From Octopus sinensis (lineage: Eukaryota): a stretch of 19,279 bases of DNA. How positions within the stretch are numbered: position 1 is the first letter of the stretch; the number at the start of each line of letters is the position of its first letter. The notes under the pieces are model-generated. The model saw nothing but the letters and a program-made list of their open reading frames with translations. It ran no database searches and had not been told where the DNA came from. The translations under genes and the position numbers were made by a program. Below are positions 1,031-18,191 of the stretch, piece after piece. The stretch is taken from contig NW_021824184.1 in assembly GCF_006345805.1 (NCBI RefSeq), positions 1-19,279 of the forward strand, given 5' to 3'.

Positions 1031-1181
1031 TGTTGGTTGTGATGCTGGTGGTGATGATATTTTTCGTGATGGCAGTGTTTTTATGTTTGGTGTTGCTGTT
1101 AGTAGTATCTATGGTGGTGGTGGTGGTGGGGGTGGTTGTCTCTTGACGTTGTAGACTAACTAATTTCAAGTCCTCAAGTTA

Positions 1182-1231
1182 TGTTGTACTGATGAACCCA
1201 AAATGAGGACGAAATAGCGCTTTCTACAACA
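1182..1231 (+). ncRNA. Minimal type I hammerhead ribozyme motif (AGCGCT stem III family)
   Basis: Stem I TGTTGTA(1182-88)/TACAACA(1225-31); CTGATGA 1189-95; GAAA 1211-14; palindrome AGCGCT 1216-21; UUC triplet, predicted cut after C1224; stem II weak. Confidence 0.7.
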
Positions 1232-1529
1232 ACTAAAACTACAGGAATATGCAGTAAACAGATACAATGGTAAAACTGAAACACCATATACTCTTTCACT
1301 CATAGCAAAAAAGAGCTCCCAAGATGAGTAGGAGATACGATGCATACCATGAAGCGGTTCTCTCTTATTGAGGAGAATATTCACCCTCTCTGTCATCTCT
1401 TAGTATCACTCTATCCCTCTCTATCCCCTTCTTACCCCGTAAGCCAATAAAGCAGCAGCAGCAGCAGCAGTTCCCAATCAAGTAACAACGTTGTTATTGT
1501 TGGTAATCTGTTGTGGTAATAAATCAACA

Positions 1530-1720
1530 TCTTTAAGAGAAGGAGAGAGAGAGGGGGGGAATGGCGAAGGGATTGTAGAATATTTAGAGAGTGAGGTGGT
1601 TATATACAGGGAAGGAGAGAGAGGAAAAGGGAGAGGGAAGAGAAAGTAAGAATTGAAGGGGATGAAGGGGAGGGAAGTAATAATGACTTGCTGGAGAGAG
1701 AAAAATATTTGTGAGATAAT
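1530..1720. repeat. Purine-rich low-complexity tract
   Basis: Degenerate GA/GAA/GGA repeats. Confidence 0.75.
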
Positions 1721-1939
1721 ATCGCGCGCGCGGGCGCGCACACAGTGACATACGTGCTAGTGCACATACACACACACTGATACACAGATATATTGCTGCA
1801 TACACGTAAACACACCTACCATTACACACATATCAGCACACTCACACACATGCATAGACATACACACCACGGATACAAATATCAAACACATACACAAATT
1901 TGCCAATGTCCGAGTTTGTAAGTACAAAAACAGAAAGAG

Positions 1940-1948
1940 ATGGAAAGG

Positions 1949-1979
<31 letters not shown>

Positions 1980-2025
1980 GAGAGAAAGAGAGAGAATGAG
2001 GGAGAGAAAGAAAAAGAAAGAGCGA
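1940..2025. repeat. (GA)n microsatellite
   Basis: Direct reading. Confidence 0.9.
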
Positions 2026-2121
2026 GAGACGGGGCGAAAATGAAAGCGTATATATTGTATCAGCAAATTTCATTCGTCGTTGACTTGTGTCTGTGCGCAC
2101 TATGAATGCAAGTATATATAC

Positions 2122-2124
<3 letters not shown>

Positions 2125-2180
<56 letters not shown>
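2125..2180. repeat. (AAT)n microsatellite, left flank of LINE-like insertion
   Basis: Near-perfect AAT run. Confidence 0.95.
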
Positions 2181-2729
2181 TGCCCTGATGCAGTACCAGG
2201 CAGTGGCTCTCATGGCTTCTGATCTTAACTGATTGGAAGTGTTATCATGTACATTGTTTTGTCTTGGTATAAAAGATGGGCTACAGCAAATATTTGCTCA
2301 ATACCACAGATTTACTTGTCATTGTTTGACCTTAACCAGTTGAGCATGTCCCTTAGTGGCTGACGATATGTGCATCTCTGATCACGAGCAGAAGTAGTGG
2401 GGGAGCATCATAGCCATGTGTTGAGAGGGATTCTTGGGGTTTGAATAGTTCACCTCTGGAAACATAGTGGTTCTTTCAACATCTTAAACAACCCTTATTC
2501 AGGGACCGTTTGGACGGATGGGCTACTCAACCTGAAGAAAATTCTAACTGGGCCCCACCTGCAAGGTCATGCGCTGTTTATCTTGATATGAGATCGCCGT
2601 GTCGCGCACATATGGCTGTGATGCATTTGCCTAGTGTACCCTTATCAGACGGGTAGTCATGATGGGTATACTGGGCTTCGTATATTTGACCTCAGTGTCA
2701 CATTGATGGCATGCACTACTTTCTCACTC
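2181..2729 (+). mobile_element. Probable 3' end/UTR of a 5'-truncated non-LTR retrotransposon inserted in an (AAT)n array (Dong/R4-like by inference)
   Basis: About 550 bp of complex sequence with sharp (AAT)n junctions on both sides, ending ...ctcactc(aat)n; recalled as an abundant Octopus repeat; no ORF. Confidence 0.55.

Positions 2730-2774
<45 letters not shown>
2730..2774. repeat. (AAT)n microsatellite / element tail
   Basis: Perfect AAT run. Confidence 0.95.
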
Positions 2775-2775
<1 letters not shown>

Positions 2776-2835
2776 TGACAACAAAAGAATTAATAAAACC
2801 TTCATATTATGTAAATAGAGGAATTTATCTATAAA

Positions 2836-3018
2836 TATAATATGTGACAATTAGTTGGTTGTCATAATAAACTCAGAGTTTCGGATGCCAGGCTGAAACC
2901 TGCTCCGGCATCTCTTTTTTTTGTCTTAATAACTAATGAGATGCCGGAGCAGACTTCGGCCCCGGCATCTGAAACTCTGAGTTTTATTATGACAACCAAC
3001 TAATTGTCACATATTATA
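2836..3018. mobile_element. Inverted duplication of an HHR-bearing, Penelope-like terminal-repeat fragment
   Basis: Arms 2836-2914 and 2938-3018 are reverse complements; the same family occurs singly at 18050-18191. Confidence 0.75.
2923..2993 (+). ncRNA. Type I hammerhead motif with core mutation (CTAATGA), AAACTC-N-GAGTTT family
   Basis: Stem I gtcttaataa/ttattatgac; CTAATGA 2933-39 (G5A); stem II GATGCCGG/CCGGCATC; GAAAC 2971-75; GUU triplet 2981-83. Confidence 0.65.
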
Positions 3019-3109
3019 TATAATATATTATATATTATATATATATATATTATATATATATATTATATATGAATAAATATGTATTCCCTCCCTGTTTATT
3101 TCGGTGTTC

Positions 3110-3144
3110 CTTTCTGTCGAAGAGGTAGGCTCGAAACTTAAAAG
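3110..3144 (+). ncRNA. Degenerate minimal hammerhead motif (CUGU-core, ACGT family)
   Basis: cttt-CTGTCGA-a-gag-gtag-gctc-GAAAC-tta-aaag; homologous to 8237-8272(-), with flanks also similar. Confidence 0.55.
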
Positions 3145-3802
3145 ATTTTCTCACTTCCTGAGCGTGTAAACAAATAAATCTGTTTGTTGTTTACAGACCC
3201 GTCTTCGTGCAGATCTTTGAGTTACATTAGTCTGGCTGTTTTGGCATTGTGTGTGAGGTCATCAGAAACAGAGTGCTTCCTGAGGAAATCACATGCGCGC
3301 GCGCACACATATACAGATATATATATAATTATATATAACCATAATACATACATATATATATATAAACATATATATGCATACATGCATATATATAATCATA
3401 ATTAAAACACACACACACGCGCGCACACACTCATATATATATATATATATATATTAGAAGAAATAAGATACTCAGAAATCTGGGTGGTTTTACATTTATA
3501 GATTTTTATTAATATGTTACATGTTTTTATAAATCATATATTAGCGCTTGCATCTACTCTAGTAGAATCTCCAAACCTTCTAATATATATATATATGGGA
3601 GGTGTTGGTATCCAGAAGACCCAAGGTGGCAGGTAACGCTATGTAAGTACTATGGCAGGATCGTAGATAAACTCTCGATTCGATAATAATACGAGTGAGG
3701 AGTCTAACGCGGATCTTGTATGAGGATGTATATATTAAATAAAATGATTCAACAAAGGCAAAGCTGTGTGGAATTTATAGGACATTTATAAAGAGAAAGT
3801 TG

Positions 3803-3850
3803 GTCTTACAGCTGTTTCTGGGATATTAGGAATATCCCTTCATCACAGAC
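3803..3850 (-). ncRNA. Type I hammerhead motif, C3G core variant (ACAGCTGT family)
   Basis: Minus strand: gtct-GTGATGA-a-gggatatt-cct-aatatccc-a-GAAAC-agct-GTA-agac; perfect 8-bp stem II. Confidence 0.65.
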
Positions 3851-4399
3851 TGTATGAGAGAGTTAACTAGACGGAAATATTGAAGTTCAATATGAAGAGC
3901 TGTTTTGGAAAAGGAAGCAAATAAGGAGTATATAAGGAAATTGGAGAATGAATGTAGAAATAAAAATAAAAATAAAAATGTATAAAAATGTTATAGTTGC
4001 AGTTCCATTATCCAAGGAAGGTGGTGTGTAGAAGAAGTAGAAGTGGTAGGGGTAGTATTCATATTAATACTACCTCAACATTCTCAAATTTTCAATCACA
4101 CTACAAAACCCCTTTGAATGAACAGTACATGGAATCTGTGTCTCCACACTTTCCATTTGTGATAACAAGATATAAACCCCTACTGGAATTTACATAGCAC
4201 GGACAGAAATAATTTCTACCACTTCTACACACCACTTTACATGGATAATGGGACTGCAAATATAACATCGTTATATATTTCCATTTTTATTTCTACATTC
4301 ATTCTCCAATTTCCCTATATACTCCTTATTTGCTTCCTTTTCCCAAATAACTCTTCATATTGAACTGTACTATTTCCCTCTAGTTAACTCTCTCATATC

Positions 4400-4447
4400 G
4401 TCTCTGATGAAGGGATATTCCTAATATACCAGAAACAGCTGTAAGAC
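4400..4447 (+). ncRNA. Minimal type I hammerhead ribozyme motif, intact core (ACAGCTGT family)
   Basis: gtct(4400-03)-CTGATGA(4404-10)-a-gggatatt-cct-aatatacc-a-GAAAC(4432-36)-agct-GTA(4441-43)-agac(4444-47). Confidence 0.75.
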
Positions 4448-4469
4448 TACCCTCCTCTTTATAAATATA

Positions 4470-4484
4470 TATTTTACATACATG

Positions 4485-4516
<32 letters not shown>

Positions 4517-4550
4517 CATACATACATACATACATATATATATATATATT
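4470..4550. repeat. (TACA)n/(TA)n microsatellite
   Basis: Direct reading. Confidence 0.95.
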
Positions 4551-5045
4551 CGTACCGGACGTTACAAAACGTAAACAACATGAAATACGACGGCAAATCT
4601 GAGTATGCGAACGAGAGAGACACATGGAAAACAAGACAAGTAACATAAAGAACGACCCTTCATCAGTTGTCGGCTGTTTATCTACTCCACATTTCGAGAG
4701 CAATTCCCGATAATATGTGTCTTCGTAAAACAGTTCCTTCCTTACAGAGGAGGTAAGGTAGCGAACGCTGGAATATACTTTGATAAGAGAAAAGATGGGA
4801 GAGGAGACAGGTAAGAATGTGCCTGGTCTGTGTGACAGACTGAAGGAAAAGAAAGATGGATGATGGTTACGTGTGAGCAACGGCAGATAGTAAAGGAGGA
4901 AGAGGGAGAGAGAGAGAGCGAGAAATAGAAAACGGTGATTGTGAGAAAAAAGAATTAGAGAAAGGATGAGATAAAAACGAAAGGGGGAGAGTGAGAACAC
5001 TACACGTAAGAGTCGCATGAAAATTAAGATAAACTTACTTGGAAT

Positions 5046-5085
<40 letters not shown>

Positions 5086-5197
5086 TACATGTATGTATGT
5101 ATGTAAACACGTGTACACGTACACACGCGCATATAAATGTACATATGTGTATGTATGTGTATATGTATGTAAGTATGTATGTATGTATGTATGTATG

Positions 5198-5237
<40 letters not shown>

Positions 5238-5280
5238 GCATACACCCATGTATGTGTGTGTATGTGCACATGTTATCATA
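5046..5280. repeat. Compound (TA)n/(TATG)n microsatellite
   Basis: Direct reading. Confidence 0.95.
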
Positions 5281-5534
5281 TACAGAATTACACGCACACA
5301 CCGCTCCGTACAACATGTATAGAGAGAGGGAGTGAGGAGAGAGAGGAACGTACGATAGGAGGAGGGAGGGCGAGGAAGAGGAGGGACAGATCTACAAACA
5401 AATTTGATTGGAGATGTCTACTCGATGATTTAATCATATTTATACATCCTGTTGATTTTCTAAAGCTACACACACTATGAATGTAATATATATGTATAGT
5501 TAAAACAAACACAAACGACGCAAAGACACATACA

Positions 5535-5588
<54 letters not shown>

Positions 5589-5595
5589 ATATACA

Positions 5596-5640
5596 TATGT
5601 AGAAGGTTAAGAAGAAGCAATATACATATATGTATATATA

Positions 5641-5675
<35 letters not shown>

Positions 5676-5751
5676 CATATATACATATATATATATATAA
5701 TATATATATATGTACATATATGTATATTGTTCCTTCTCAACCTTCTACATA
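5596..5751. repeat. 35-bp inverted repeat around a (TA)n core
   Basis: tatgtagaaggttaagaagaagcaatatacatata (5596-5630) vs tatatgtatattgttccttctcaaccttctacata (5717-5751). Confidence 0.8.
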
Positions 5752-5876
5752 ATATATATATATAGATATTATATATTATATTAATCATATATTATTTATT
5801 ATTGTTATTATGTATTGGTTTATGTCTGTCACTGTTTGAGTTGCATCATAGTGTTTTTATCTCTAATTCATATTTG

Positions 5877-5926
<50 letters not shown>

Positions 5927-6409
5927 CTACATGTATATATACAAATATAGTAGCCATCAGCCTCCTGATATAGTTTTTAAATGTATTATAGAATGGTAAG
6001 CGTATATGAAAAGGTCATTTATCATTAGAATCATGCACACATTTACACATTATTCTCTATTATTGGCTCACTCTTCACATATGCATACAAGTAGAAGCAT
6101 TATACGCTTTCGTACCATCATTCGAAAATTAAAAGCATTCGCAACATATCGCTTCTTGTGGTGGTGGGTGGACATGTGCTTAATGCGAATATTATCGCCA
6201 TATACACATACAGAGATATGCACACACACACACACACACACACTTACAAGAGAGAGAGAGAGAGAGAGAAAGACATGCACGTATACATACTTCATTTCTT
6301 CTCATATGTTCCTGCACTGACTCATGCACGAGTGGAAACTCATACTTCACCCACTTGCACTCAGCTTACACTCACGCCAAGATACACTTTTACACCTATA
6401 ATAGACCTC

Positions 6410-6523
6410 CTCTCTCTCTCTCTCTCTCTTCTCTCTCTCCCTCCCTTTGTTTCTCTCTGTGTTTGTCGTTTCAATAGACGAACAAACACTCTGCAACATG
6501 TTCCTACACAAACATATACATAC

Positions 6524-6559
<36 letters not shown>

Positions 6560-6647
6560 TCCTCTCTCGCTCTTTCTCTCTCTCTCTTTCTATCTTTCTC
6601 TCTCTCTTCCTCTCTTTCTTTCTTTCTCTCTCACTCTCTCTCTCCTC

Positions 6648-6684
<37 letters not shown>

Positions 6685-6700
6685 ATTTATATGTATAAGT
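6410..6700. repeat. (CT)n and (TA)n microsatellite cluster
   Basis: Direct reading. Confidence 0.85.
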
Positions 6701-6825
6701 TTATATGCCGTGTATTAATCCTCATAATGGGATGTGTACCAACAAGATTACACTGTTTTTATTACTTTATTGGGAACAAATTTCTCTAAAATAAATACGT
6801 ATATATTTAGCATATGACCTATATT

Positions 6826-7246
6826 CAATTAAGAGAAGAAGATAGAGAGTTAATAGATAATAATTAATTTATTAATATATTCATAATCATTCCTACAATT
6901 GTTTCAATTTATACTCAATTAATAAATTACAAATTTATATAATAAATTTGCATAAATAAGTTTTGAGCAAAATATTATCAGGGAAATATTAGATATTAAA
7001 GATTTACATGGTGAACAACTTGTTCTTTGTGTTTGAGAGAACAAATTGTTCACCATGTAATTCTTTAATGTCTAATATTTCCCTGGTGATATTTTGCTCA
7101 AATCTTATTTATGCAAATAAATTCACAAATTACATAAATTTGTAAATTATTTATTGAGTATAAACTGAACCAATTGTAGGAATGCTAATCAATATGTTAA
7201 TTGATTAATTATTGACCATTAACTCTCTATTTCCTTCCCTTAATTG
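6826..7246. mobile_element. AT-rich fold-back palindrome (MITE-like), about 420 bp
   Basis: Arms mirror over their whole length (catggtgaacaacttgttct / agaacaaattgttcaccatg); loop about 7027-7037; ends CAATTA...TAATTG. Confidence 0.8.
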
Positions 7247-7470
7247 TATACACACACATACACACACACACATACATATGTTCACACACATGCATACGCA
7301 CACATATATGTATGTATGTATGTATTATGTATGTATGTATGTATGTATGTATGTTTGTATGTATGTATGTATGTATGTGCGTGCGTGCGTGTGTGTATAT
7401 ATATGCATATATATGTGTATGTGTTTGTGTGTGCTTGCATACATGCATACATATATATATATATATATAG
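7245..7470. repeat. (CA)n/(TATG)n/(TA)n microsatellite
   Basis: Direct reading. Confidence 0.9.
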
Positions 7471-8032
7471 ATTCAGATGAATATGGTAGTTAAGTCAAAG
7501 GCACCAGAATTTTGTATGAAACGATGGTACCACATTCCTCGGATATACTTGTTGCTTATTTTGATTTATATATTATTATATATATAATTATATATATATA
7601 TTATATATATATATGTATGTATATATATACACTTGTATTTGTGTAGTAACGGTGCCATTAGTTTCGTGTTACGAAAATATCTTAGCAAGTTTTCAGGCTG
7701 ATTACATGGAGGAATGGATTTCGTCTACATTTGGAATTAAAGCACGATAAAAACACGAATTCGCAATAAAGTCTCGCGAAACGTTTTGGTAGACGAAACA
7801 AGAAACTTTGTATGACTTATCTGGCCGAAATTTCGAAGTCACTGTCAACAATATTCTCGTTTAAGAATAATAAATTTGTAATCTGCAGCAGTATCGAGTA
7901 ACCATCAAATTTATGTAAAAGTCTTTTTATTATAACTGAAGATAAAAACAAACGTTAATATGTATGTATCTCTCTTTTAGTTTTTAATTATTATAAATTT
8001 TCCACTGAGGAGGGAGCAAGTTTCCAACAAAG

Positions 8033-8146
8033 ATGTATGTATGTATGTATGTATGTATGTATGTATGTATGTATGTATGTATGTATGTATGTGTAGTATG
8101 TATGCATGCATGTATGTATGTATATTTTATGTATGTATGTATGTAT
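8033..8146. repeat. (TATG)n microsatellite
   Basis: Direct reading. Confidence 0.95.
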
Positions 8147-8300
8147 AGGGAGAGTTTACGAAAAAAACAAAAGACGAAGACAGGTGGTGTACAAAACAAA
8201 CAATGTATTAGTATAACGCTCAGAAATAGAAAAAGTCTTTTACGTTTCGAGCCTACGCTCTTCTACAGAAAGGGACACAGAAAAAACAAGGAGAGAAAAA
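8146..8300 (-). mobile_element. HHR-bearing dispersed repeat (Penelope-like terminal-repeat fragment)
   Basis: Minus strand is homologous to about 3085-3200 (+) and runs into (CATA)n. Confidence 0.6.
8237..8272 (-). ncRNA. Ultra-minimal hammerhead motif with CUGUAGA core (ACGT family)
   Basis: Minus strand: cttt-CTGTAGA-a-gagc-gtag-gctc-GAAAC-GTA-aaag; stem III is only the loopless palindrome ACGT. Confidence 0.65.
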
Positions 8301-8622
8301 AATATGTGTAGTGGCTAACAATCTATCACGGCGTCTCATATATGTATGTATGTATTACATCAGTGTGTCCTCCCAGTCTTTGCTCAATGAAAGGTTAACT
8401 ACAAGAAAGCAATCTGTCTAGGATCGACACCAGCAATCTATCTAGAAGAAGGTAACTCTAAATTCAAATCCCTCACTGCTATCGTGTCGTTAGCCTTTGA
8501 TTGGGCGAAAAGCGAGAGAAGGGCATTCTGATATAAAACTTGCGACTGCAAATGCACCCAATGATGTCGCCTTGATCTTCTTTTTGGATCATGCTTTGTA
8601 GTTTACAGAATGAGATTAGTTT

Positions 8623-8745
8623 CAGGAGACATCGTCTCCATCTAGCTATACAACACGATCTGTGAGAGGGGGTGCTAGATTCCCTTGTTCGAAAATATAA
8701 GGACACAGATCGTGTCGTATAGCCAGCTGGAGACGATGTCTCCTG
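8623..8745. repeat. 42-bp inverted repeat with 39-nt spacer and nested hairpins
   Basis: 8623-8664 vs 8704-8745, 39/42 complementary; each arm contains GGAGAC-NNN-GTCTCC. Confidence 0.9.
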
Positions 8746-9194
8746 GGGTTAAATTACAGCAACATTCGTCCTAAACTAGGACTGTCATATTATGTTGGCA
8801 AACAATCTTCACTCCAAAGTACTGTTGCTGAATATCTCTTGTTGTGACATTTAAAAATAGTAATTTTCTAAATATAAAATACTTTATATATTTTGTTGTA
8901 TTTCGGGACGGTCATCTTAATTTTAATTTGTGCCAAATAAACACTCGCACTGTATATTTGTTCTTCACTTGTTTATAACTGTTCTTATTCTAACTCATGT
9001 CCATTGTCCGGAAACACATCTGTGACCTCTTCAGCGGCACTTTTCGTGTGCGCTCCGTGTTTATGTGTGTGTGGTATGCTTATAAATATGACTTTGATGA
9101 TGATTGCAGACACATTCTCTTGCTTCTTTAAGTCATGTTCATATCGAAGGCATATTTCTCCATTTCCAGAATAACTAACTGCATTACTACAACT

Positions 9195-9218
9195 ACACAC
9201 ACACACACACACACACAA

Positions 9219-9268
<50 letters not shown>
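9195..9268. repeat. (CA)n microsatellite
   Basis: Direct reading. Confidence 0.95.
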
Positions 9269-9271
<3 letters not shown>

Positions 9272-9355
9272 TATTGAGTTTTCTGGCTTACTAACATTTT
9301 CCCTTCAGATGTAGGTGGACGTGGCCAGGCCGAAGTAATTTCCAGTTGAAAACTC

Positions 9356-9566
9356 ACTTTAAAAGCACTCAAAAACCGTTATATTCACTTCAACATTTAA
9401 TTCAGCAATAAAATTCAACAATTAAATTTAAAAATAGAATGTTGGAGTGAATCTAACGGTTTTTGTGTGTTTTTAAATGACTTATAACCCCTCCACGCTG
9501 CAATTGTTTTTGTTTCAGCACACAATCTCAGATCAGGCCACTTGCTATGCAAGTACATGTTCGTAA
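9356..9566 (+). mobile_element. Internally deleted copy of the palindromic element at 15018-15340
   Basis: Shares attcacttcaacattt, gaatgttg-agtgaatctaacg, tccacgctgcaattgtttttg and ctatgcaagtacat. Confidence 0.8.
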
Positions 9567-10739: not shown

Positions 10740-10771
10740 ACTCACTCTTTCTCCTCCTTTCTCTCTGTCTA

Positions 10772-10853
<82 letters not shown>

Positions 10854-10938
10854 CCTCTTTATTTCTTTCAGCCTCTTTCTTTTATTGATCTAATTTTTGC
10901 TCTGCTCGCACAGCCTTTCGGCAATTTTGCTTGACTTT

Positions 10939-10998
<60 letters not shown>

Positions 10999-11050
10999 TA
11001 TATATATATATATATAATATATATATATATTATATATATATATATAATCT
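10740..11050. repeat. (CT)n and (TA)n microsatellites
   Basis: Direct reading. Confidence 0.9.
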
Positions 11051-11449
11051 ACATAATTATTTCTTTTTTCTTTATTCTTACTGTTGTCTCGTTCGGCAAG
11101 ACTAAAAAAATTTCCTATTCATCGTCGTTCTATCAATTTTATAATTATATCATATTCATTATGGTAATTAATTATTGTTAAATTAATCAAGAAAGCCACA
11201 CTTCTAATGCTAGCTATGACAATGACTAGGCTTCGATTTTTACTAGTAGGATATTGTCATTACTGAACTAATACCCTGGAAAAAAAAGGACCACAAATTC
11301 TTCCATCAAACATTCCTTTAAATTAGTGGTTCTCGACAAGGGTGCATCTGACCCTTAAAAGGTCCATATCAGATTTTATTGTTAAAGTTTATGACTGATA
11401 AACTGGTTATAATTTTACAATACACAAAATATTTTTAAAGATTTTTCAT

Positions 11450-11547
11450 AGGCGCAGGAGTGGCTGTGTGGTTCCGGGTTCAGTCCCACTGCGTGGTAGC
11501 TTGGGCAAGTGTCTTCTACTATAGCCTCGGGCCGACCAAAGCCTTGT
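11450..11547 (+). mobile_element. SINE family A, 5' part only, with 27-nt deletion
   Basis: Matches 13238 onward, but lacks the segment between two TGGT microhomologies; stops at ccaaagccttgt. Confidence 0.85.
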
Positions 11548-11718
11548 TCGTCTTTATGTTCTGAGTTCAAATTCCGCCGAGATCGAGTTCATTTTTCATC
11601 CTTTCGGGGTCGATGAAATAAATACAAACAAATACGAGTCAAACAGTAGGGTCGATGTAACCTACTTACCGCTCCCCGCCCTCAGATTTCAGGCCTTGTG
11701 CCTATTATAGAAAGGGAT
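11548..11718 (+). mobile_element. SINE family B, 5'-truncated
   Basis: gagttcaaattccgccgag (B-box-like)...aggccttgtgcct...tagaaagg; homologous to 11853-12072(-). Confidence 0.8.
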
Positions 11719-11852
11719 ATAACAAATGAATTAAGTTAGAAAACTGAGTTTAGCTTCCCAGTTGTGTCGAAGAATTTAGCATTTGTTTTTGTTTCTACCG
11801 TTATCTTCAGTTGAAAATTGGTGAAGGTGACCCCAACAATAACAATAAAAAT

Positions 11853-12072
11853 AATAATCCTTTCTACTGAAGGGACAAGGCCTAAAATTAAGGGGGGGAG
11901 GGTAAGTCGATAAAATCGACCCCAGTACATGACTGGTACTTATTTTATCGACACCAAAAGGACGAAAAGCAAAGTCAACCTCGGCAGAATTTGAACTCCG
12001 AGCGTAAAGACGTACGAAATGCTGCCAAGCATTTCGTCCGGAGAGCTAACGACTCTGTAATCCCTCCGCCTT
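11853..12072 (-). mobile_element. SINE family B, near full length
   Basis: Minus strand: aaggcggag...cagagtcgttagc...ggagttcaaattctgccgagg...aggccttgtccct...agtagaaaggattatt. Confidence 0.8.
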
Positions 12073-12425
12073 CAGTTATGTAATATGAATAGCAATAAGC
12101 TAACGCATAAACGTCTGACGAAATCAAGTCTAACTCAGCACACACCCAGGATAATTATCAAAACGCAATAACATAATTCATCTACAACAAAGAACAACAA
12201 TTTCGAACCAAATATATATGATCTGGTTCAATCCCCCGTTCACTCCTAATCACTAACACTTCGTCCACAAAATCAATAAAACTCATAAATCACTTAACAG
12301 AATCAATTTAAAAGCCGTCTACTTTACAACCCTTGACATGGGGAAAAATCATTATGTTACATAACACTAACAATAAAAAACGACCAGTAAAAAAACAACA
12401 GATAGTACCACTTACTAAAAGATTG

Positions 12426-12728
12426 GTGGAGGCATATGGCGTAGTGGTTAGAACAGCGGACTCGCGGTCGGGGGGTCGCGGGTCCGAATCTCAGACCGGG
12501 TGATGTGTGCCATTATGAGCGAAACACTCAAGTTCCACGCAGCTCCGGCAGAAGGTGATGGCGAACTTTTGCTAACTTATTTGCCAGAACTTTCTCTATC
12601 TCTTTCTTCTTGCCTCAAGCAGCTCATCTGTGACGGACCAGCGTCCCGCCCAGGTGGGGGAACCTATATACCATTGAAACCGGAAAACCGGCACTTATAA
12701 GCCAAGCATGGCTCGAGAAGGGACAAAC
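12426..12728 (+). mobile_element. tRNA-derived SINE with family-D head and a different body
   Basis: tggcgtagtggttagaacagcggactcgcggtcg (A box); head shared with 700-1030(-), then diverges. Confidence 0.75.
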
Positions 12729-12887
12729 AATTGGGTTGTATCTTCTTCACCATCAGTTCTTAGGTGATGATATCACATATCAGGCGACGCCATTATTACA
12801 TTCGCAAAGATACTCCGCAAGCGCTGTAATGACAATGACAAGAAATTCATTTAAAGGTAGATTCCATCAACATATGAAACCTTTTAG

Positions 12888-13204
12888 AGGCGCTTCGTGG
12901 GTTATGACGACAAGGGCTCCATTTGGTGCGATCAGCGGAACAGCTTGTTTGTGAAACTGACATGAAAGTAGCTGAGAACACCACAGGCACGCATAGCCTT
13001 AACGTAGTTCTCAGGGAGATTCAGCGTGACACAGAATGTGACAAGGCTGGCCGTTTAAAATTACAGGTACAAATAATTTTTGATTGTTGTGTGGATTAGA
13101 TCAACGTGAAATAAAGTGCCTTGCTCAAGGACAGATTTCGCCACCGGGAATCTAACTCATGACTGTAAGCCAGATACTCTAACCACTAAGCCACGCGGCT
13201 TCAT
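12888..13204 (-). mobile_element. tRNA-derived SINE family C, near full length
   Basis: Minus-strand head gaagccgcgtggcttagtggttagag (A box); body matches 410-665(+). Confidence 0.8.
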
Positions 13205-13237
13205 GAAAGCCTGTCAAGCAACATTAAGAAATTCCAT

Positions 13238-13636
13238 ATGCGCATGCGTGGCCGTGTGGTAAAAAGCCTGCTTCCCAACCACATGGTTCCGGGTTCAGAC
13301 CCACTGCGTGGCACCTTGCGCAAATGTCTCCTACTATAGCCTCGGGCCGACCAAAGCTCTGTGAGTTGATTTGGTAGACGGAAACTGAAGGAAGCCCCGT
13401 CATATATATATATATATATATTTGTGTGTTTGTATTTGTCCCCCACCACCACCATCGCTTGATAACCGATGTTTGTGTGTTTACGTCCCCGTGACTTAGA
13501 GGTTCAACAAAAGACACCAATAGAATAACTACTAGGCTTACAAAGAATAAGTCATGGGTCGATTTGTTCGACTAAAGGCGGTACTCCAGCATGGCCGCAG
13601 TCAAATGACTGAAACAAGTGAACGAATAAAAGAATA
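13238..13636 (+). mobile_element. tRNA-derived SINE family A, full length with internal (TA)n
   Basis: gtggccgtgtggtaa...gggttcagaccc (A/B boxes), ending ccagcatggccgcagtcaaatgactgaaac...; two partial homologs in the window. Confidence 0.9.
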
Positions 13637-14516
13637 ACAGTCTCGAACGAAAATATGAGAGTCTTCGAGATTTTTCGGAACGAGAGTTGGGACGGGAGGT
13701 TCGGGGAAGTAATCATCAGTCTCGGCTCCTGTTTCAACTGCCCCCACGAAAGGCTTTTAATGTCCGGCTGGTGGTTGCTTTAATCCGGGAGATGGATGAA
13801 GTCCACCTAACTTCAAACCAACGGTTAGTGAAGTAAATCAAATGAAAGAAACCCGAGCTGACAGTTTCTTTTCCTTCTGCAATTTATGTCTCTCCCCCAC
13901 CGCCATACTCTTCTTCTATGGGTGCTGTTATTGTTTAATTCATTTCCAAAGAATTCCCTACATTCAACTCCAATCCTTTTCCATTCCTTCTTTTATGTTT
14001 CTTCAGTTGCCATTTAAAATTGAATTTTCTGGCCAGGCCACTTATTCAAATTTTGCATTTTTCTCTGATGAAAATGTCATAAAATGAATAAATGAATTAA
14101 TAAAACTTTATTAATTAAATTGCTGATATTCTAAACCATTATTTTCACAATTTCCAAACTACAGTGTTAATCTATTTTGTGTATTATTCAAGACAATTAC
14201 CATTTGGTTTCTGTGTAATTATTCTCTTTAAAAATGTAAAAAATTGTTTTAATGAAATATCAATATCTGTTGTGAGGGTAACCTGTATTTAAGAATTATC
14301 AATGTTCTCTTGATACTTTCATAATTGTCGATGTATTGTGCTGTTAGCAGTATAATGTTATGATCAAGTCTGCTAATATTTCTCCCGATAGCCAACGTTT
14401 AGGTTTTACAACAGAAACGTCTGGGGTTTTATCACAACTGTTTCTTTTTGTAATAACCAATAGCTAAAAACTTGATAAGATTTTAATGTATGTTATAGCA
14501 AACTTTCAAGATATTA

Positions 14517-14815
14517 CTAGTGGTTAGTGATTAGGGTGTTGCACTCAAGATCGCGAGATCCCGAGTTCCTTTCCCGGACAGGGCGATGTGTTGTGTTCTT
14601 GAGCAAAACAATTAATTTCACTCTTCTTCAGTCCACTCAACAGTAAACGGGCCACCCTGTGACGGACCACCCTTTCGATCGGCGTGAATTTTGGCCTACT
14701 CACCATGCCAGTGGGGTGGCATCTATCGAAAGTTAACACGATGCGAAACGCATTGGGACTAGCGATGTAAAAGCAATATCCAATAGTCTGGTCGACAACG
14801 TGCTCACATGGTTTA
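14517..14815 (+). mobile_element. Degenerate tRNA-derived SINE (family E)
   Basis: tagtggttag head; gttgtgttcttgagcaaaaca..tttcac block as in family C; ctgtgacggacca shared with the 12426 element. Confidence 0.65.
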
Positions 14816-14819
14816 CACA

Positions 14820-14902
14820 TATAGATACATGTAAATATATACATGTATGTGTGTATGCGTGTCTATGTGTGTGCGTGCGTGTACATACATACATACATAC
14901 AG

Positions 14903-14997
<95 letters not shown>

Positions 14998-15017
14998 CAT
15001 ACATACATACATACATA
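14820..15017. repeat. Compound (TG)/(TACA)/(TA) microsatellite
   Basis: Direct reading. Confidence 0.95.
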
Positions 15018-15340
15018 CAATTGCACGTGGAAGGTATTCATACCCATTTAAAAACACAGTGGATTCACTTCAACATTTAAATTTCATTTGTGTCAAAATA
15101 TTTTCGTCGCTTTGAAACCATGACTTCTTCACTGATAAAATTCCGTGCTGCATCTGAGCATTTTGACAGTGAAGAGGTCGCGGTCTCAAAGCGACGGAAA
15201 TATTTTGGCACAAATGAAATTTGAATGTTGCAGTGAATCTAACGTTTTTTGTGTGTTGTTAAATGTTTTATGAACACTTTCCACGCTGCAATTGTTTTTG
15301 CTTCAGTACACGATCACTTTCTATGCAAGTACATCTTTGT
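15018..15340 (+). mobile_element. Palindromic non-autonomous element: 277-bp fold-back (15018-15294) plus asymmetric 3' extension
   Basis: caattgcacgtggaa...ttccacgctgcaattg; arms pair throughout; the 3' extension is shared with the 9356 copy. Confidence 0.85.
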
Positions 15341-15398
15341 AATATATATATATATATATGTGTGTGTGTGTATATTATAACTTAACATTATGTGCTTT

Positions 15399-15527
15399 AT
15401 AATCTCTGAAGAAGCCTAGAGATATATACAAATACCTCATGTTCATCTACCTATTACTTCAATCCACTTGAGTAATAAAGGTAGAATGAGATAGTTTTAT
15501 CTATTGGCTGAAACAGCTGTAAGTTAT
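15399..15527 (+). ncRNA. Type I hammerhead motif with intact core and 97-nt extended stem II (ACAGCTGT family)
   Basis: ataatct-CTGAAGA(15406-12)-agcc...ggct-GAAAC(15510-14)-agct-GTA(15519-21)-agttat; the insert folds as a long hairpin. Confidence 0.7.
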
Positions 15528-16561
15528 TTTCCCAATTTATATACATGTTTTTTATAATAATTACTGGTATCCTTATATATTACTATATTTTATATCTTAT
15601 ATCTTATATGTAAAGAATAATATGTTATATGTATGTATATTATTGTAATTATCAGTTTAGTAAATAAATAAATAGTTAACATAATATAATGTCTAAAAGT
15701 TGATGAACCACCTATTGTTCTCCATTTTCTTATTGCTATATATATATATACTTACATACTATTATAATATGCTATGTAAGACATTATAATCATAATAGAA
15801 TAGATTTCATAATATGTAACATGATATATATATATCTATATATATATATATATATATATATGATTTGATTATATTAAACCTTATAATGCATCAGTTTGAG
15901 AGAGAAGGGAGCGTCATAATTTATATTCGACTAATGGACGTATTTCCAGTGACAGACATTAAACGGATGTAGGGAACCCCGTTGTGAACATCATTAGTAC
16001 TATAACCTAGTATGCTAGCATCAAGTGACTGATGTATTATTTCTTAAAGATAAATTAATATCGTGAAAATAGGAGAAAAACCAATCTAATTTTAAATAAA
16101 ATGACAAGCCGCCTATGGTGTAATAGGCATTACTGGCAAACGGCAAGCGGTAAAAAAGCAATTTGTGTTTTTCTGATGAGCTTATTTTTGTATTTTAAAT
16201 TAATCCCGGCCAATAATTTTTGTAAATGCCCAAATTTACAGTTCCTATTATGCAAAATATCTCTTGGTTATTAACTTGGCATGCTTAATCTGACAACCAA
16301 TATTCCGTAACTTTCAATATTTTGCTAGTACTCCTGCTTACAAGCGAGAAATAAGGTAAAAAAAAAACCCTAATTGATGCCTTCGTGTTTTCGGTAGAGG
16401 TGAGATTTTGGTCTTGATTTAAAAATGGTCTTCATTAAAATGAAATTTATCTGTTAATCTTTGCAGACAAGATAAACGTTAACTTGCAAATGGAAGAAAA
16501 TGTGTAAAAGAGCAGAGGAAGAATTAAACGGTTTTACTGGACCGGCTCTTTCCTCGGTTCC

Positions 16562-17218
16562 TAAAAAAATAGAGAAAATAGAGAAATTACAAACGAAAGA
16601 AGAACAAAATCAATTAATGGTAAAGAGGAAGTTACTATGATAGGGTGGTTCAGCGAACGACTGGGTGGAATAAGGGTAGAAAAGGAGGAATGGCGAGAAT
16701 TGAGTAATTCTTTACCTCTATCTCTATGTGTTGTGTCTGAGAAGGAGAGGAGGGTGAGAGATGAAATGAAAGACGAGAGAATTATGAGGGATGGAGAATT
16801 ATGGATAAATGAAGGGGAGGGGTGCGAGAGAGAAAATCTGACAGAAAAGGTTGGAGATAAAAAGATAAAAAGAGAAGAAGAGAGGATGGATGGATGGATG
16901 GAGAGTTTCAATAGATATGGTGGGAGAGAAACAATTACGTGAGATGGAAAGAGTAAAAGTGAATGACTGAGGGAGAGAGGGGGGATAGGAGGAGAAAGAA
17001 AGAATGAGTAAAGGAGTGTGTGAGGGAGGAAATGAGTGATCGCATCAGAGAGAGAGAGAGAGAAAGAGGGAGAGAGAGAGAGTCGTAGAGAGAAATACTG
17101 ATGCGTTTGGTACAAGAAAAACAAAACTGATGAAGAGAAGTGTGTAAAAATATGAAATTAATGGCGTATGAAAGGAGAGTGGTAGGAAGGAGATCTAGAG
17201 AACTGAGAGGGTTAGAGA

Positions 17219-17251
<33 letters not shown>

Positions 17252-17480
17252 GGGAGAGAGTGGAAGAAAGACAGTGAGAGGGAGAGAAAGAGAAAGAGTC
17301 ATTGACTGTTATGAGATGGTAACTGAGGAAAAATACAGTTTCGAGAAAGACAAGAAGCAGAGATTGAATGTATAAAATGAGATATGATATTGTGAGGAGA
17401 TGTGGAAAACAAAAACGAGAGGAAACTGTTGATTGAAGATTAGGGTTTGTTAAAGAAAGGAACGAAATTAATAATGAGAA
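16562..17480. repeat. About 900-bp purine-biased low-complexity tract including (GA)n
   Basis: Strong A/G strand bias; (GA)n at about 17050-17090 and 17215-17295. Confidence 0.85.
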
Positions 17481-18049
17481 CAATTGCAGTCGTTCTTCAA
17501 GTTAATTACATGTGTAGTAAGGATGCCTATTTAGGTTGACCTTTCGATTACATTTCTGAAGTGGAAATGAAATGGTTTACTTCAGGAATCCCCATGTCTG
17601 ATGTAAAGTTGCTAATGAAAATTGGATTTTGGTTGTAAGGAAATATAGTTTAAAATAAGTTATTTTGTGGAATTTGCAAGGATATAAAGTGAAATCTCAA
17701 CATAGTTTAATATAAAATCTAGAATAATGATTGTTATGAACTAGGTAAAAAGGTTACTATTATAGGGGCGAGAGAAATGGGTTTTATATATATGTGTGTG
17801 TGTGTGTGTGTGTAAGGTATAAGCTAGAGGTGTTTAAACCCTCTAAGGGATAGATGTATCCAAAGGCACTCCTGGTAATTACCTCCGTAAGTATGGTCCT
17901 TGGTATAAGGTATACGGCAGCAGATAATTTACAAAGGTAAACCGTTGTTTGATGTATATAAAGACGATAGGAAAACGGAGGAAAAACACACAATAGAAGC
18001 GTGCCTGTTGTGTTAAAAAGCCATTATTTAGCACAACAGACACGTCATT

Positions 18050-18191
18050 TTCATAGCATTTTTGTTTGTCTTAATAACTGACGAGATGCCGGAGCAGATT
18101 TCCGCCCAGACATCCGAAACTCAGAGTTTTATTATGGCAATCGAATGATTGTCACATATTATATTACAGATAAATTCCTCTATTTACATTA
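18050..18191 (+). mobile_element. HHR-bearing repeat, same family as 2836-3018
   Basis: 18130-18191 matches the reverse complement of about 2808-2870. Confidence 0.75.
18068..18138 (+). ncRNA. Type I hammerhead ribozyme motif, intact core (AAACTC-N-GAGTTT family)
   Basis: Stem I gtcttaataa/ttattatggc; CTGACGA 18078-84; stem II gatg/catc; GAAAC 18116-20; GUU triplet 18126-28. Confidence 0.75.

What the first reader, a model, noticed from the sequence alone, without database searches (positions are those of the whole stretch)
1182..18138. Dense set of minimal type I hammerhead ribozymes, all with palindromic stem III 'barcodes'
Seen: 8 full-length HHR motifs plus 2 partial ones in 19 kb, at 1182+, 2923+, 3110+, 3803-, 4400+, 8237-, 15399+, 18068+, with partials at about 2861-2914- and 4635-4671-. 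Each full-length motif has a closing stem I and GAAA...NUH. Stem III is too short to fold alone but is self-complementary in four versions: AGCGCT, ACAGCTGT, ACGT (damaged in the 3110 copy) and AAACTC-N-GAGTTT. Established: minimal type I HHRs with palindromic stem III occur in Penelope-like element terminal repeats and in metazoan retrozymes, and cleave as dimers. Inference: four unrelated HHR-bearing families coexist here, and stem III could act as a family-specific pairing code, so copies from different loci might activate each other in trans.
Basis: partly seen in the sequence, partly recalled or inferred. Interest (0 to 1): 0.85.

Follow-up and report, generated by a model that had tools for sequence, protein, structure and literature searches.

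The report
Penelope-element hammerhead ribozyme motifs, mostly decayed
The hammerhead-ribozyme-like motifs are real, but they are the usual small ribozymes carried at the 3' ends of Penelope-like retrotransposons and their short relatives, which litter this whole 2.7-Gb animal genome; most copies here are broken, so the finding is a new example of a known thing.

Summary
All ten motifs are at the stated coordinates. Only four (1182+, 4400+, 15399+, 18068+) keep the full conserved core.

- **Broken or non-canonical:** 2923+ (G5A) and 3803- (C3G) are dead copies. 3110+ and 8237- belong to a family whose consensus has U at invariant A6. 4635-4671- has no GAAA and is not a hammerhead.
- **Families:** the motifs fall into five unrelated high-copy repeat families. 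Four have a canonical type I hammerhead in their consensus. All five stem III segments are self-complementary.
- **Identity:** families B and C are 5'-truncated 3' ends of autonomous Penelope-like elements, with a GIY-YIG endonuclease ORF 0.7-1.2 kb upstream. Their 5' ends are ragged, their 3' ends are fixed at (TA)n, and the window pairs are head-to-head inverted copies. C' (~400 nt) and D (~215 nt) are short units with the same 3' layout.
- **Density:** these families occur about once per 7 kb in unrelated loci, so the window is only about 3-fold denser than that sampled background.
- **Prior work:** this matches the minimal hammerheads described by Cervera and de la Peña in 2014.
- **Barcode idea:** it is untested. 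Different palindromes necessarily pair poorly with each other, C and C' share one, and the predicted dimer also needs stem I pairing in trans.

Verdict: new members of a known kind.

The parts
1152..1321 (+). Family A element, an old low-copy family. The hammerhead is at 1182-1231: stem I 1182-1188/1225-1231, core 1189-1195, helix II 1196-1210, GAAA 1211-1214, stem III 1215-1222, U16.1-C17 1223-1224. The core is intact, but helix II and stem III are decayed.
   Evidence: blastn to the family consensus gives 83% identity. The consensus from 20 genomic copies is UGUUGUA-CUGANGA-GCCC..GGGC-GAAA-UAGCGCUA-UC-UACAACA, with N7 hypervariable.
2758..2914 (-). Family B (Penelope-like element 3' end), a copy 5'-truncated inside the hammerhead. 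It lacks CUGAU. The remaining part of the ribozyme is at 2914-2861. Its 3' end faces left into (AAT)n/(TA)-rich sequence.
   Evidence: blastn to B consensus positions 282-439 gives 87% identity.
2915..3019 (+). Family B copy, head-to-head with the previous one. The hammerhead is at 2927-2989 with core CUAAUGA (G5A), which is predicted dead. Its 3' end runs into (TA)n.
   Evidence: The family consensus core is CUGACGA.
3084..3208 (+). Family D short element (full unit about 215 nt). The hammerhead-like motif is at 3109-3144: CCUUU-CUGUCGA-A-GAG(-)GUAGGCUC-GAAA-CU-UA-AAAG. It has U at invariant position 6, and stem III ACGU is damaged to ACUU.
3726..4045 (-). Family C (Penelope-like element 3' end), 5'-truncated copy. 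The hammerhead is at 3852-3802 with core GUGAUGA (C3G), which is predicted dead.
   Evidence: blastn to C consensus 114-427 gives 89% identity. Inverted-repeat arms are 3784-3974/4276-4466.
4098..4466 (+). Family C copy, head-to-head with the previous one. The hammerhead is at 4399-4448: CGUCU-CUGAUGA-A-GGGAUAU..AUAUACC-A-GAAA-CAGCUG-UA-AGACU. The core is intact and helix II has one mismatch. The predicted cleavage is after A4443. The 3' end abuts (TACA)n/(TA)n.
   Evidence: It is a descriptor hit.
4611..4698 (-). Family F repeat. It has a conserved CUGAUGA (4666-4660) closed by GACAA/UUGUC, but no GAAA. It is not a hammerhead.
   Evidence: Alignment with two relatives in L077 and L025 and anatomy.
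8164..8302 (-). Family D copy. The hammerhead-like motif is at 8273-8237 with core CUGUAGA (U6) and stem III ACGU intact. The 3' end abuts (TACA)n.
15373..15770 (+). Family C' short element (about 398 nt), with a fixed 5' end and a 3' end at (TA)n. The hammerhead is at 15399-15527: core CUGAAGA (N7 = A, canonical), helix II a 97-nt imperfect hairpin closed by AGCC/GGCU, stem III ACAGCUGU. The predicted cleavage is after A15521.
   Evidence: Most genomic copies cover query positions 44-441. The long hairpin is visible.
18044..18189 (+). Family B copy, 5'-truncated. The hammerhead is at 18072-18134: UAAUAA-CUGACGA-GAUG..CAUC-C... GAAA-CUCAGAG-UU-UUAUUA. All core positions are intact. The predicted cleavage is after U18128.
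   Evidence: Rfam RF00163 scores 17.9 bits over the full model. It is a descriptor hit.

Best explanation
The motifs are the minimal type I hammerhead ribozymes that Penelope-like retrotransposons (PLEs) carry in their 3'-terminal (pseudo-LTR) region. Here they are seen in decayed, mostly 5'-truncated insertions.

**What each family is.**
- B and C are the 3' ends of autonomous PLEs.
- C' and D are short units of about 400 and 215 nt with the same layout: ribozyme, then a tail of about 100-250 nt, then (TA)n. They are probably mobilised by PLE enzymes.
- A is an old family whose full structure is unknown.

**How the copies got here.** They arose by target-primed reverse transcription into (TA)n-type microsatellites. 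This explains the ragged 5' ends, the fixed 3' ends and the head-to-head inverted pairs at 2758-3019 and 3726-4466.

**How the ribozyme works (inferred from published work, not shown here).**
- Stem III is too short to close on its own.
- Two copies of the same family pair through the self-complementary stem III, and through stem I in trans, to form a double hammerhead.
- Cleavage occurs 3' of H17. This would process transcripts that contain two same-strand copies (partial tandems).
- Solo or inverted copies like those in this window are expected to be inactive.
- Published in vitro work suggests cleavage is not needed for insertion.
For: **Shown here.**
1. Family consensus sequences from genomic copies carry canonical CUGANGA, GAAA and UH. 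Helix I, helix II and a self-complementary stem III sit in the right places for A, B, C and C'.
2. Across eight families in this genome the helix I and II sequences are all different. Helix II is fully paired in all eight. Helix I is fully paired in four and has one mismatch in two, but is weak in C' (3 of 5) and PLE1 (3 of 6).
3. N7 is the one hypervariable core position in A and D.
4. The central unpaired nucleotide of the B stem III varies G/A/U, while the arms stay fixed.
5. B and C copies have 5' ends spread from 0 to about -640 nt and constant 3' ends at microsatellites.
6. A GIY-YIG-type endonuclease ORF lies 661 nt upstream of the B hammerhead in L040 and 1186 nt upstream of the C hammerhead in L080, on the same strand. 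The Pfam GIY-YIG hit has E = 0.005.
7. The B endonuclease peptide has 16,202 genomic candidates with ORFs up to 717 aa. The C peptide has 9,487.
8. The genome holds at least 4,846 GIY-YIG candidates. 147 of 150 scored pass the Pfam cut-off, and open frames reach 883 aa.
9. Other PLE 3' regions end in (TA)n. One carries a canonical minimal hammerhead at L130:528-570.
10. Folding predicts the double hammerhead, with intermolecular stems III and I.

**From the literature.**
[quoted passage not shown] Pairs occur 100-700 bp apart on opposite strands. They are expected to act as dimers and have low activity in vitro (PMC4209133).
- PLE insertions show 5' truncation, adjacent inverted 5'-truncated copies and a bias towards microsatellites (PMC8557442).
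Against: - No cleavage, expression or RNA-end data were available.
- Rfam covariance models do not reach their thresholds: 0 hits at gathering, 17.9 bits for the best copy, none for C, and only one weak HH9 hit among the A, C' and D copies.
- Within family A, pair changes are no more compensatory than in shuffles.
- Family C has an A.A mismatch at the base of helix II. Family D has U at invariant A6.
- C', D and A were not linked to a PLE ORF. They share no sequence with the nine GIY-YIG-flanking 3' regions sampled, seven of which are PLE ends, beyond (TA)n.
- The Pfam hit for the B endonuclease is below the curated cut-off, and the C peptide gave none.
- Hammerhead mutants did not affect PLE insertion in vitro (PMC11167929). 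The role of the ribozyme itself therefore remains open.
Confidence: 0.8

Rival explanations
1. The short families (C', D, perhaps A) are non-LTR retrozymes. These are non-autonomous units that are transcribed as multimers, self-cleaved by the hammerhead, circularised by a tRNA ligase and copied back into the genome.
For: - C' (about 398 nt) and D (about 215 nt) are discrete units in the retrozyme size range, with one hammerhead-like motif each.
- Retrozymes are reported in molluscs and are thought to derive from PLE pseudo-LTRs (PMC7229834; bioRxiv 10.64898/2026.07.22.740005).
- One partial tandem with 431-bp spacing was seen for family E.
Against: - Copies in the window and in the sampled loci are solitary, not tandem.
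- Unit ends do not coincide with the predicted cleavage site, and 3' ends sit at (TA)n like the PLEs.
- D has U6 in its core, which predicts poor cleavage (PMC3088659).
- No RNA data were available.
Confidence: 0.2
2. One reading: stem III palindromes are a family-specific pairing code that lets transcripts of dispersed copies from different loci activate each other in trans.
For: - Predicted homodimers gain 6.4-12.5 kcal/mol over two monomers. Most heterodimers gain 0-6 kcal/mol.
- Across eight families in this genome, stem III takes six different sequences.
- Bimolecular dimer cleavage of such hammerheads is reported in the literature cited.
Against: - Different palindromes are expected by chance. 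Only 16 six-nucleotide or 64 eight-nucleotide palindromes have A...U ends, so distinctness is no sign of selection.
- C and C' share ACAGCUGU and cross-pair at -9.3 kcal/mol. E and PLE1 share ACAUGU.
- The dimer also needs stem I in trans, so stem III alone is not the code.
- About half of the sampled B and C copies, and 4 of the 8 window copies, have lost a required core, GAAA, stem III or UH element.
- In the inverted pairs, a read-through transcript would bury the ribozyme in a long hairpin.
Confidence: 0.07
3. The motifs are chance resemblances inside ordinary repeats, and the inverted pairs are MITE-like DNA transposons.
For: - This is true for some. F (4635-4671-) lacks GAAA.
- A descriptor hit at 14631- lies in a SINE-like repeat and has no palindromic stem III.
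- D has a non-canonical core.
- Rfam thresholds are not met.
Against: - Four unrelated families each have the full core, three correctly placed helices and a self-complementary stem III in their consensus.
- Shuffles give 0.27 hits per window.
- The inverted arms are unequal, 5'-truncated copies of PLE 3' ends with their 3' ends facing outward. Genomic copies are mostly solitary.
Confidence: 0.03

Closest known systems
Minimal hammerhead ribozymes of Penelope-like elements (Cervera and de la Peña 2014, PMC4209133; Lünse, Weinberg and Breaker, RNA Biol 14:1499, cited in PMC6765202)
   Same: - Type I topology and the canonical 11-nt core.
- Helix I of 4-7 bp and helix II of 4-7 bp.
[quoted passage not shown]
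- A very short, self-complementary helix III that predicts dimers.
- Location in the PLE 3'/pseudo-LTR region.
- Pairs a few hundred bp apart on opposite strands, and many consensus families per genome.
   Different: - Family C (and PLE2) has an unpaired base on both sides of helix II.
- C' has a 97-nt helix II.
- D has U6.
- Activity was not tested here.
- These particular families were not found described in the literature I could search.
[quoted passage not shown] 2021, PMC8557442; Frangieh et al. 2024, PMC11167929)
   Same: - An endonuclease ORF upstream of the hammerhead.
- Strong 5' truncation.
- An inverted 5'-truncated copy next to an insertion.
- Ends in (TA)n microsatellites.
- Thousands of copies.
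   Different: - The window holds only the last 100-370 nt of such elements, with no ORF.
- The PLE clade (Penelope/Poseidon, Neptune or Hydra) was not determined.
- No reverse transcriptase domain was examined.
Metazoan non-LTR retrozymes (Cervera and de la Peña 2020, PMC7229834)
   Same: Short AT-rich non-coding units (C' about 400 nt, D about 215 nt) carrying one type I hammerhead-like motif, in a genome that also has PLEs.
   Different: - The copies are not in tandem arrays.
- Unit ends are set by (TA)n insertion and not by the cleavage site.
- Circular RNAs were not tested.
Rfam Hammerhead_1 (RF00163)
   Same: The same core and topology. The genome's commonest family (E, not in the window) scores up to 48 bits.
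   Different: The window copies score 17.9 bits at most, because of the long helix II, the extra unpaired bases and a stem III with no loop.

Membership tests
Hammerhead ribozyme, type I | Conserved core C3 U4 G5 A6 N7 G8 A9 ... G12 A13 A14 ... A15.1-U16.1 H17 | tested here: met
   - Met in the consensus of families A, B, C and C'.
- Met in window copies 1182+, 4400+, 15399+ and 18068+.
- Not met in 2923+ (G5A) or 3803- (C3G).
- Not met in family D (U6 in the consensus) or F (no GAAA).
Hammerhead ribozyme, type I | Three helices around the core, with helix I open (5' and 3' ends in helix I), kept by compensatory change | tested here: met
   - Across eight families the helix I and II sequences all differ.
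- Helix II is fully paired in all eight (4/4 to 7/7).
- Helix I is 4-7 pairs in six families, but only 3/5 in C' and 3/6 in PLE1.
- Within family A alone, covariation is not above shuffles.
Hammerhead ribozyme, type I | Score at or above the Rfam RF00163 gathering threshold (34 bits) | tested here: not met
   - 0 hits at gathering threshold in the window.
- 17.9 bits for 18072-18134, and nothing for 4385-4465.
- Copies of A, C' and D gave only one HH9 hit, at 18.3 bits.
- Published PLE hammerheads were likewise found with relaxed descriptors.
Hammerhead ribozyme, type I | Site-specific self-cleavage 3' of H17 | not testable with these tools
   No RNA or biochemical data were available.
PLE-type minimal hammerhead | Helix III too short to close by itself, but self-complementary, so that two copies can form an extended helix III | tested here: met
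   - Stem III segments: AUAGCGCUAU, ACUC-N-GAGU, ACAGCUGU (C and C'), ACGU, ACAUGUGU, AGUACU, ACAUGU.
- The cofold minimum-energy structures show the double hammerhead, with a gain of 6-12.5 kcal/mol.
PLE-type minimal hammerhead | Location in the terminal (pseudo-LTR/3') region of a Penelope-like element | tested here: met
   - Met for B and C and for PLE2 (L130).
- Not established for A, C' or D.
Penelope-like element | ORF with reverse transcriptase plus GIY-YIG endonuclease | tested here: inconclusive
   - Endonuclease-type ORFs lie upstream of B and C hammerheads. Pfam GIY-YIG gives 17.5 bits against a cut-off of 22.6 for B, and no hit for C.
- These peptides have thousands of genomic relatives, with frames up to 717 aa.
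- The genome has many GIY-YIG ORFs of 775-883 aa.
Penelope-like element | Insertion signature: 5' truncation, partial tandem or inverted 5'-truncated copies, microsatellite targets | tested here: met
   - 5' ends are spread over 0 to -640 nt and 3' ends are fixed.
- Head-to-head pairs lie at 2758-3019 and 3726-4466.
- (TA)n or (TACA)n follows the 3' ends of B, C, C', D, E and the PLE loci.
Non-LTR retrozyme | Head-to-tail tandem repeats of 150-450 bp, each with a hammerhead | tested here: not met
   - There is no tandem pair in the window.
- Sampled copies of B, C, C' and D are solitary or inverted.
- One same-strand pair of family E, 431 bp apart, lies elsewhere.
Non-LTR retrozyme | Expression as unit-length circular RNA | not testable with these tools
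   No transcriptome data were available.

The most novel reading that the evidence does not exclude
Stem III together with stem I forms a family-specific recognition code. Under this reading, transcripts of dispersed solo copies of one Penelope-like family find each other and cleave in trans, while copies of other families in the same cell are ignored. A second point not excluded: the natural core variants seen here are active, which would widen the hammerhead consensus. These are U6 in the very abundant family D, and U3/A8 in an apparently intact PLE family.
Probability: 0.07. Interest if true: 0.6.

Novelty: new member of a known kind. Interest (0 to 1): 0.3.

Why it matters
- **Annotation.** A large group of repeats in this cephalopod-like genome can now be placed. 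Families that an automated repeat annotation might leave unclassified (not checked) are 3' ends of Penelope-like elements, or short elements with the same architecture. Each carries a hammerhead motif.
- **Test material.** The families offer natural cases for open questions about PLE hammerheads. These include dimer dependence, tolerance of unpaired bases beside helix II, a 97-nt helix II, and the U6 and U3/A8 cores.
- **The role of the ribozyme.** The most abundant family has a non-canonical core. This fits published hints that cleavage is not needed for spread.
- **Scope.** None of this changes what is known about the kind.

Tried and rejected
- **Rfam scans.** Gathering and E-value scans of the window gave no hammerhead. 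The only hits were low-complexity microRNA-like matches on microsatellites.
- **Strict descriptor.** It allowed no mismatches or unpaired bases and found nothing. I replaced it with a relaxed one plus shuffles.
- **ORFs near family E.** I looked for PLE ORFs within 1.5 kb of the 30 best RF00163 hits. There were none, only unrelated LINE fragments.
- **Similarity to PLE 3' regions.** blastn between families A-E and nine sequences downstream of GIY-YIG hits (seven are PLE 3' regions; L132 and L133 are not) found only (TA)n, plus a stray D copy.
- **Within-family covariation in A.** It was not above shuffles, as expected for neutrally decaying copies.
- **Family F as a permuted hammerhead.** I tried reading it as type II or III. 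It does not fit (and inspection).
- **Family D in another register.** No register restores A6.
- **Lünse et al.** The paper could not be read. It is cited only through a review.
- **Sequence allowance.** I used query-coverage ranges and chance copies in loci already held instead.

Full report
**Setting.** The window is a whole 19,279-bp contig (C655) of a 2.72-Gb, 13,516-contig assembly. It is AT-rich and full of microsatellites and repeats. The assembly size, the contig number and the roughly 30 very large contigs recall an Octopus assembly. That is from memory and was not tested.

**Checking the observation.** All ten motifs are at the stated places.

The conserved hammerhead core (CUGANGA, GAAA, U16.1-H17) is complete only in four copies:
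- 1182-1231
- 4399-4448
- 15399-15527 (N7 = A is allowed)
- 18072-18134

The other motifs deviate:
- 2927-2989 reads CUAAUGA (G5A).
- 3852-3802(-) reads GUGAUGA (C3G). This single change is reported to abolish activity (PMC11167929).
- 3109-3144 and 8273-8237(-) read CUGUCGA and CUGUAGA, with U at invariant A6.
- 2914-2861(-) is a copy truncated inside the ribozyme.
- 4671-4635(-) has CUGAUGA and a closing stem but no GAAA. Two relatives elsewhere show the same, so it is not a hammerhead.

Rfam gives no hit at gathering thresholds. Searched on its own, 18072-18134 matches Hammerhead_1 over the full model at 17.9 bits, against a cut-off of 34. The C copy gives nothing.

A relaxed descriptor finds 3 hits in the window against a mean of 0.27 in 300 dinucleotide shuffles. 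Two are claimed motifs. The third, at 14631-, looks like chance.

**The motifs belong to repeat families.** Searching the genome with each region gave these numbers of first-look candidates:

| Family | Window copies | Candidates |
|---|---|---|
| B | 18068+, 2923+, 2914- | at least 2,137 |
| C | 4400+, 3803- | at least 1,465 |
| C' | 15399+ | at least 1,121 to 2,185 |
| D | 3110+, 8237- | at least 1,959 |
| A | 1182+ | 34, at 70-84% identity |

Consensus sequences from the copies:

| Family | Consensus |
|---|---|
| A | UGUUGUA-CUGANGA-GCCC..GGGC-GAAA-UAGCGCUA-UC-UACAACA |
| B | UAAUAA-CUGACGA-GAUG..CAUC-(C)GAAA-CUCNGAG-UU-UUAUUA |
| C | CGUCU-CUGAUGA-A-GGGAUAU-CCCUA-AUAUCCC-A-GAAA-CAGCUG-UA-AGACU |
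| C' | AAUCU-CUGA(C/U)GA-AGCC..(97-nt hairpin)..GGCU-GAAA-CAGCUG-UA-AGUUA |
| D | CCUUU-CUGUCGA-A-GAGC-GUAG-GCUC-GAAA-CG-UA-AAAG |

So four families have a canonical type I hammerhead as their ancestral state. D has U6 in nearly all copies. Changes at A6 are reported to give low activity (PMC3088659).

The families share no sequence apart from the core. C and C' share only 14 nt.

**Evidence that the fold was selected.**
- Across eight families in this genome, helix I and II sequences are all different. This set includes the commonest family E, found with RF00163 at up to 48 bits, and two PLE families.
- Helix II is fully paired in all eight. Helix I has 4-7 pairs in six of them, but only 3/5 in C' and 3/6 in PLE1. 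Every stem III segment is self-complementary.
- N7 is the single hypervariable core position in A and in D.
- The unpaired centre of the B stem III varies G/A/U (10/6/6), while the arms are fixed.
- Within the old family A, changes look like neutral decay: 79% of cells are paired, which is no better than shuffles. That is expected for dead copies. It means the support for covariation comes from between families, not within one.

**What the families are.**
- In 29 B and 28 C loci the 5' ends are spread continuously from 0 to about 640 nt upstream, while the 3' ends are fixed. This is the signature of target-primed reverse transcription.
- Longer copies share more than 1 kb.
- They contain ORFs of the PLE endonuclease type, with a zinc-finger-like CxC...C segment, Y..YVGLT...F..RF..H, and C..C..E.
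- The ORF lies 661 nt upstream of the B hammerhead in L040 and 1,186 nt upstream of the C hammerhead in L080, on the same strand.
- Pfam gives GIY-YIG at E = 0.005, below the cut-off.
- The B peptide has 16,202 genomic candidates, with open frames up to 717 aa. The C peptide has 9,487.
- The genome has at least 4,846 GIY-YIG candidates. 147 of 150 scored pass the Pfam cut-off, with frames of 775-883 aa.
- Seven of the nine regions sampled downstream of GIY-YIG hits are PLE 3' regions, and all seven end in (TA)n. The other two (L132, L133) are not recognisable PLE ends.
- One of these families carries a canonical minimal hammerhead, GAAC-CUGAAGA-U-UGCA..UGCA-U-GAAA-GUAC-UA-GUUC, at L130:528-570.
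- B, C, C', D and E all place the ribozyme about 100-250 nt before a 3' end that abuts (TA)n or (TACA)n.
- C' is a unit of about 398 nt with a fixed 5' end (15373-15770). D is a unit of about 215 nt. Neither was linked to an ORF.

**The inverted pairs.** The two pairs in the window, 2758-2914(-)/2915-3019(+) and 3726-4045(-)/4098-4466(+), are head-to-head, unequal, 5'-truncated copies whose 3' ends point outward.

**Comparison with what is known.** Every one of these features is described for PLEs:
- Hammerheads in the pseudo-LTRs, with a long helix II, a short helix I, an unpaired base at the 5' end of helix II and a small palindromic helix III.
- Pairs 100-700 bp apart on opposite strands.
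- Expected action as dimers, and low activity in vitro (PMC4209133).
- 5' truncation, an adjacent inverted 5'-truncated copy and microsatellite targets (PMC8557442).

Retrozymes are the tandem, circular-RNA-forming relatives (PMC7229834). A 2026 preprint derives them from PLE pseudo-LTRs. The tandem criterion is not met here.

I found no description of hammerheads in octopus repeats in the searchable literature. A 2026 repeat annotation of O. vulgaris lists 31 recently active PLE families and 893 unclassified SINE families.

**Density.** In 265 kb of unrelated loci fetched for other reasons, there were 37 chance copies of B, C, C', D and E, about one per 7 kb. D alone occurs about once per 20 kb. 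The window has 9 copies in 19 kb, about three times that sampled background, on an unplaced repeat-rich contig. The 'dense set' is a property of the genome, not of this locus.

**Mechanism.**
- *Shown here:* the sequence architecture and the insertion signature.
- *Predicted:* two copies of one family form a double hammerhead in which both stem III and stem I are intermolecular. Homodimers gain 6.4-12.5 kcal/mol. Most heterodimers gain 0-6 kcal/mol, but C x C' gains 9.3.
- *Inferred from the literature:* cleavage happens when two same-strand copies are on one transcript (partial tandems).
- *Consequences for the window:* there are no nearby intact same-strand pairs. In the inverted pairs, a read-through transcript would bury the ribozyme in a long hairpin. 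The copies here are therefore expected to be inert.

The role of cleavage in the PLE life cycle is unsettled. Hammerhead mutants did not change insertion in vitro, some PLE clades lack the motif, and here the most abundant family (D) has a non-canonical core.

**The barcode idea.**
- Different palindromes cannot cross-pair well. That is arithmetic, not evidence of a code.
- With A...U ends fixed there are only 16 possible six-nucleotide palindromes and 64 eight-nucleotide ones. Six different stem III sequences in eight families is what chance gives.
- Two pairs of families share one: C with C', and E with PLE1.
- Specificity would rest on stem I as well as stem III.
- The idea remains untested, and I rate it unlikely as a biological function.

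**Verdict.** The identity is PLE-type minimal hammerheads in truncated PLE ends and short relatives. These are new members of a known kind, of modest interest.

Noticed in passing
L125:~1045-1090, L126:~975-1020, L128, L129:643-685, L131:979-1020 (3' regions of PLE copies with ORFs of up to 883 aa): A hammerhead-like motif with UUGAUAA in place of CUGAUGA: U3 and A8 replace the C3-G8 pair. It is followed by helix II GGUUC/GAACC, GAAA, stem III ACAUGU and UA/AA, about 90 nt before the (TA)n end. U3/A8 covariation is a known active natural variant (PMC3088659). Stem I is weak.
   Followed up: partly
L130:528-570 (also L127, with U4C): A second PLE family carries a canonical minimal hammerhead with stem III AGUACU and an unpaired U on each side of helix II. 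This resembles the A/A beside helix II in family C.
   Followed up: partly
L125:230-680, L128 and L131 likewise: The PLE 3' region holds 4-5 tandem repeats of about 90 nt, each containing GATTGGTCA (CCAAT-box-like, reverse) and TGATGACGTC (CRE-like). This may be promoter modules of the pseudo-LTR.
   Followed up: no
window 3084-3208, 8164-8302; L010, L013, L015, L046, L058, L059, L068, L076, L077, L086, L088, L090, L126: Family D is the commonest of these families, at about one copy per 20 kb of sampled sequence, although its consensus core has U at invariant A6. Position 7 still varies freely (C/U/A/G). One copy (L068) reads canonical CUGAAGA.
   Followed up: partly
window 15413-15509: Helix II of the C' hammerhead is a 97-nt imperfect hairpin. 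That is unusually long for a hammerhead, and it draws spurious plant microRNA matches in Rfam.
   Followed up: no
window 6822-7250; 9358-9477; 15051-15250; 8610-8760; 5596-5751: Several other long inverted repeats and hairpins, some nested, look like MITE-type elements. The 9358-9477 and 15051-15250 hairpins share the string CACTTCAACATTTAA. They are unrelated to the hammerhead families.
   Followed up: no
window ~955-1030(-), 11450-11560, 12430-12500, 13100-13200(-), 13240-13350, 14520-14640: tRNA-like SINE heads, for example GGCGCAGGAGTGGCTGTGTGGT...GGTTCCGGGTTCAGTCCC. ARAGORN calls none of them a tRNA.
   Followed up: no
window, many sites (e.g. 5179-5248, 7270-7350, 14843-14915): Microsatellites of the (TA)n, (TG)n and (TACA)n types give dozens of sub-threshold Rfam 'mir-297/mir-3149/mir-466' matches. 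These are low-complexity artefacts.
   Followed up: yes
window 14500-14631 (-): The relaxed hammerhead descriptor also hits here: CUGAAGA, a 120-nt 'helix II' and GAAA. There is no self-complementary stem III, and the site lies inside a SINE-like repeat. It is most likely chance.
   Followed up: partly
L006 (G000:C16:25146363-25146839): Two family E copies lie 431 bp apart on the same strand, each with an intact hammerhead. This is a partial tandem of the kind in which cis dimers could form.
   Followed up: partly
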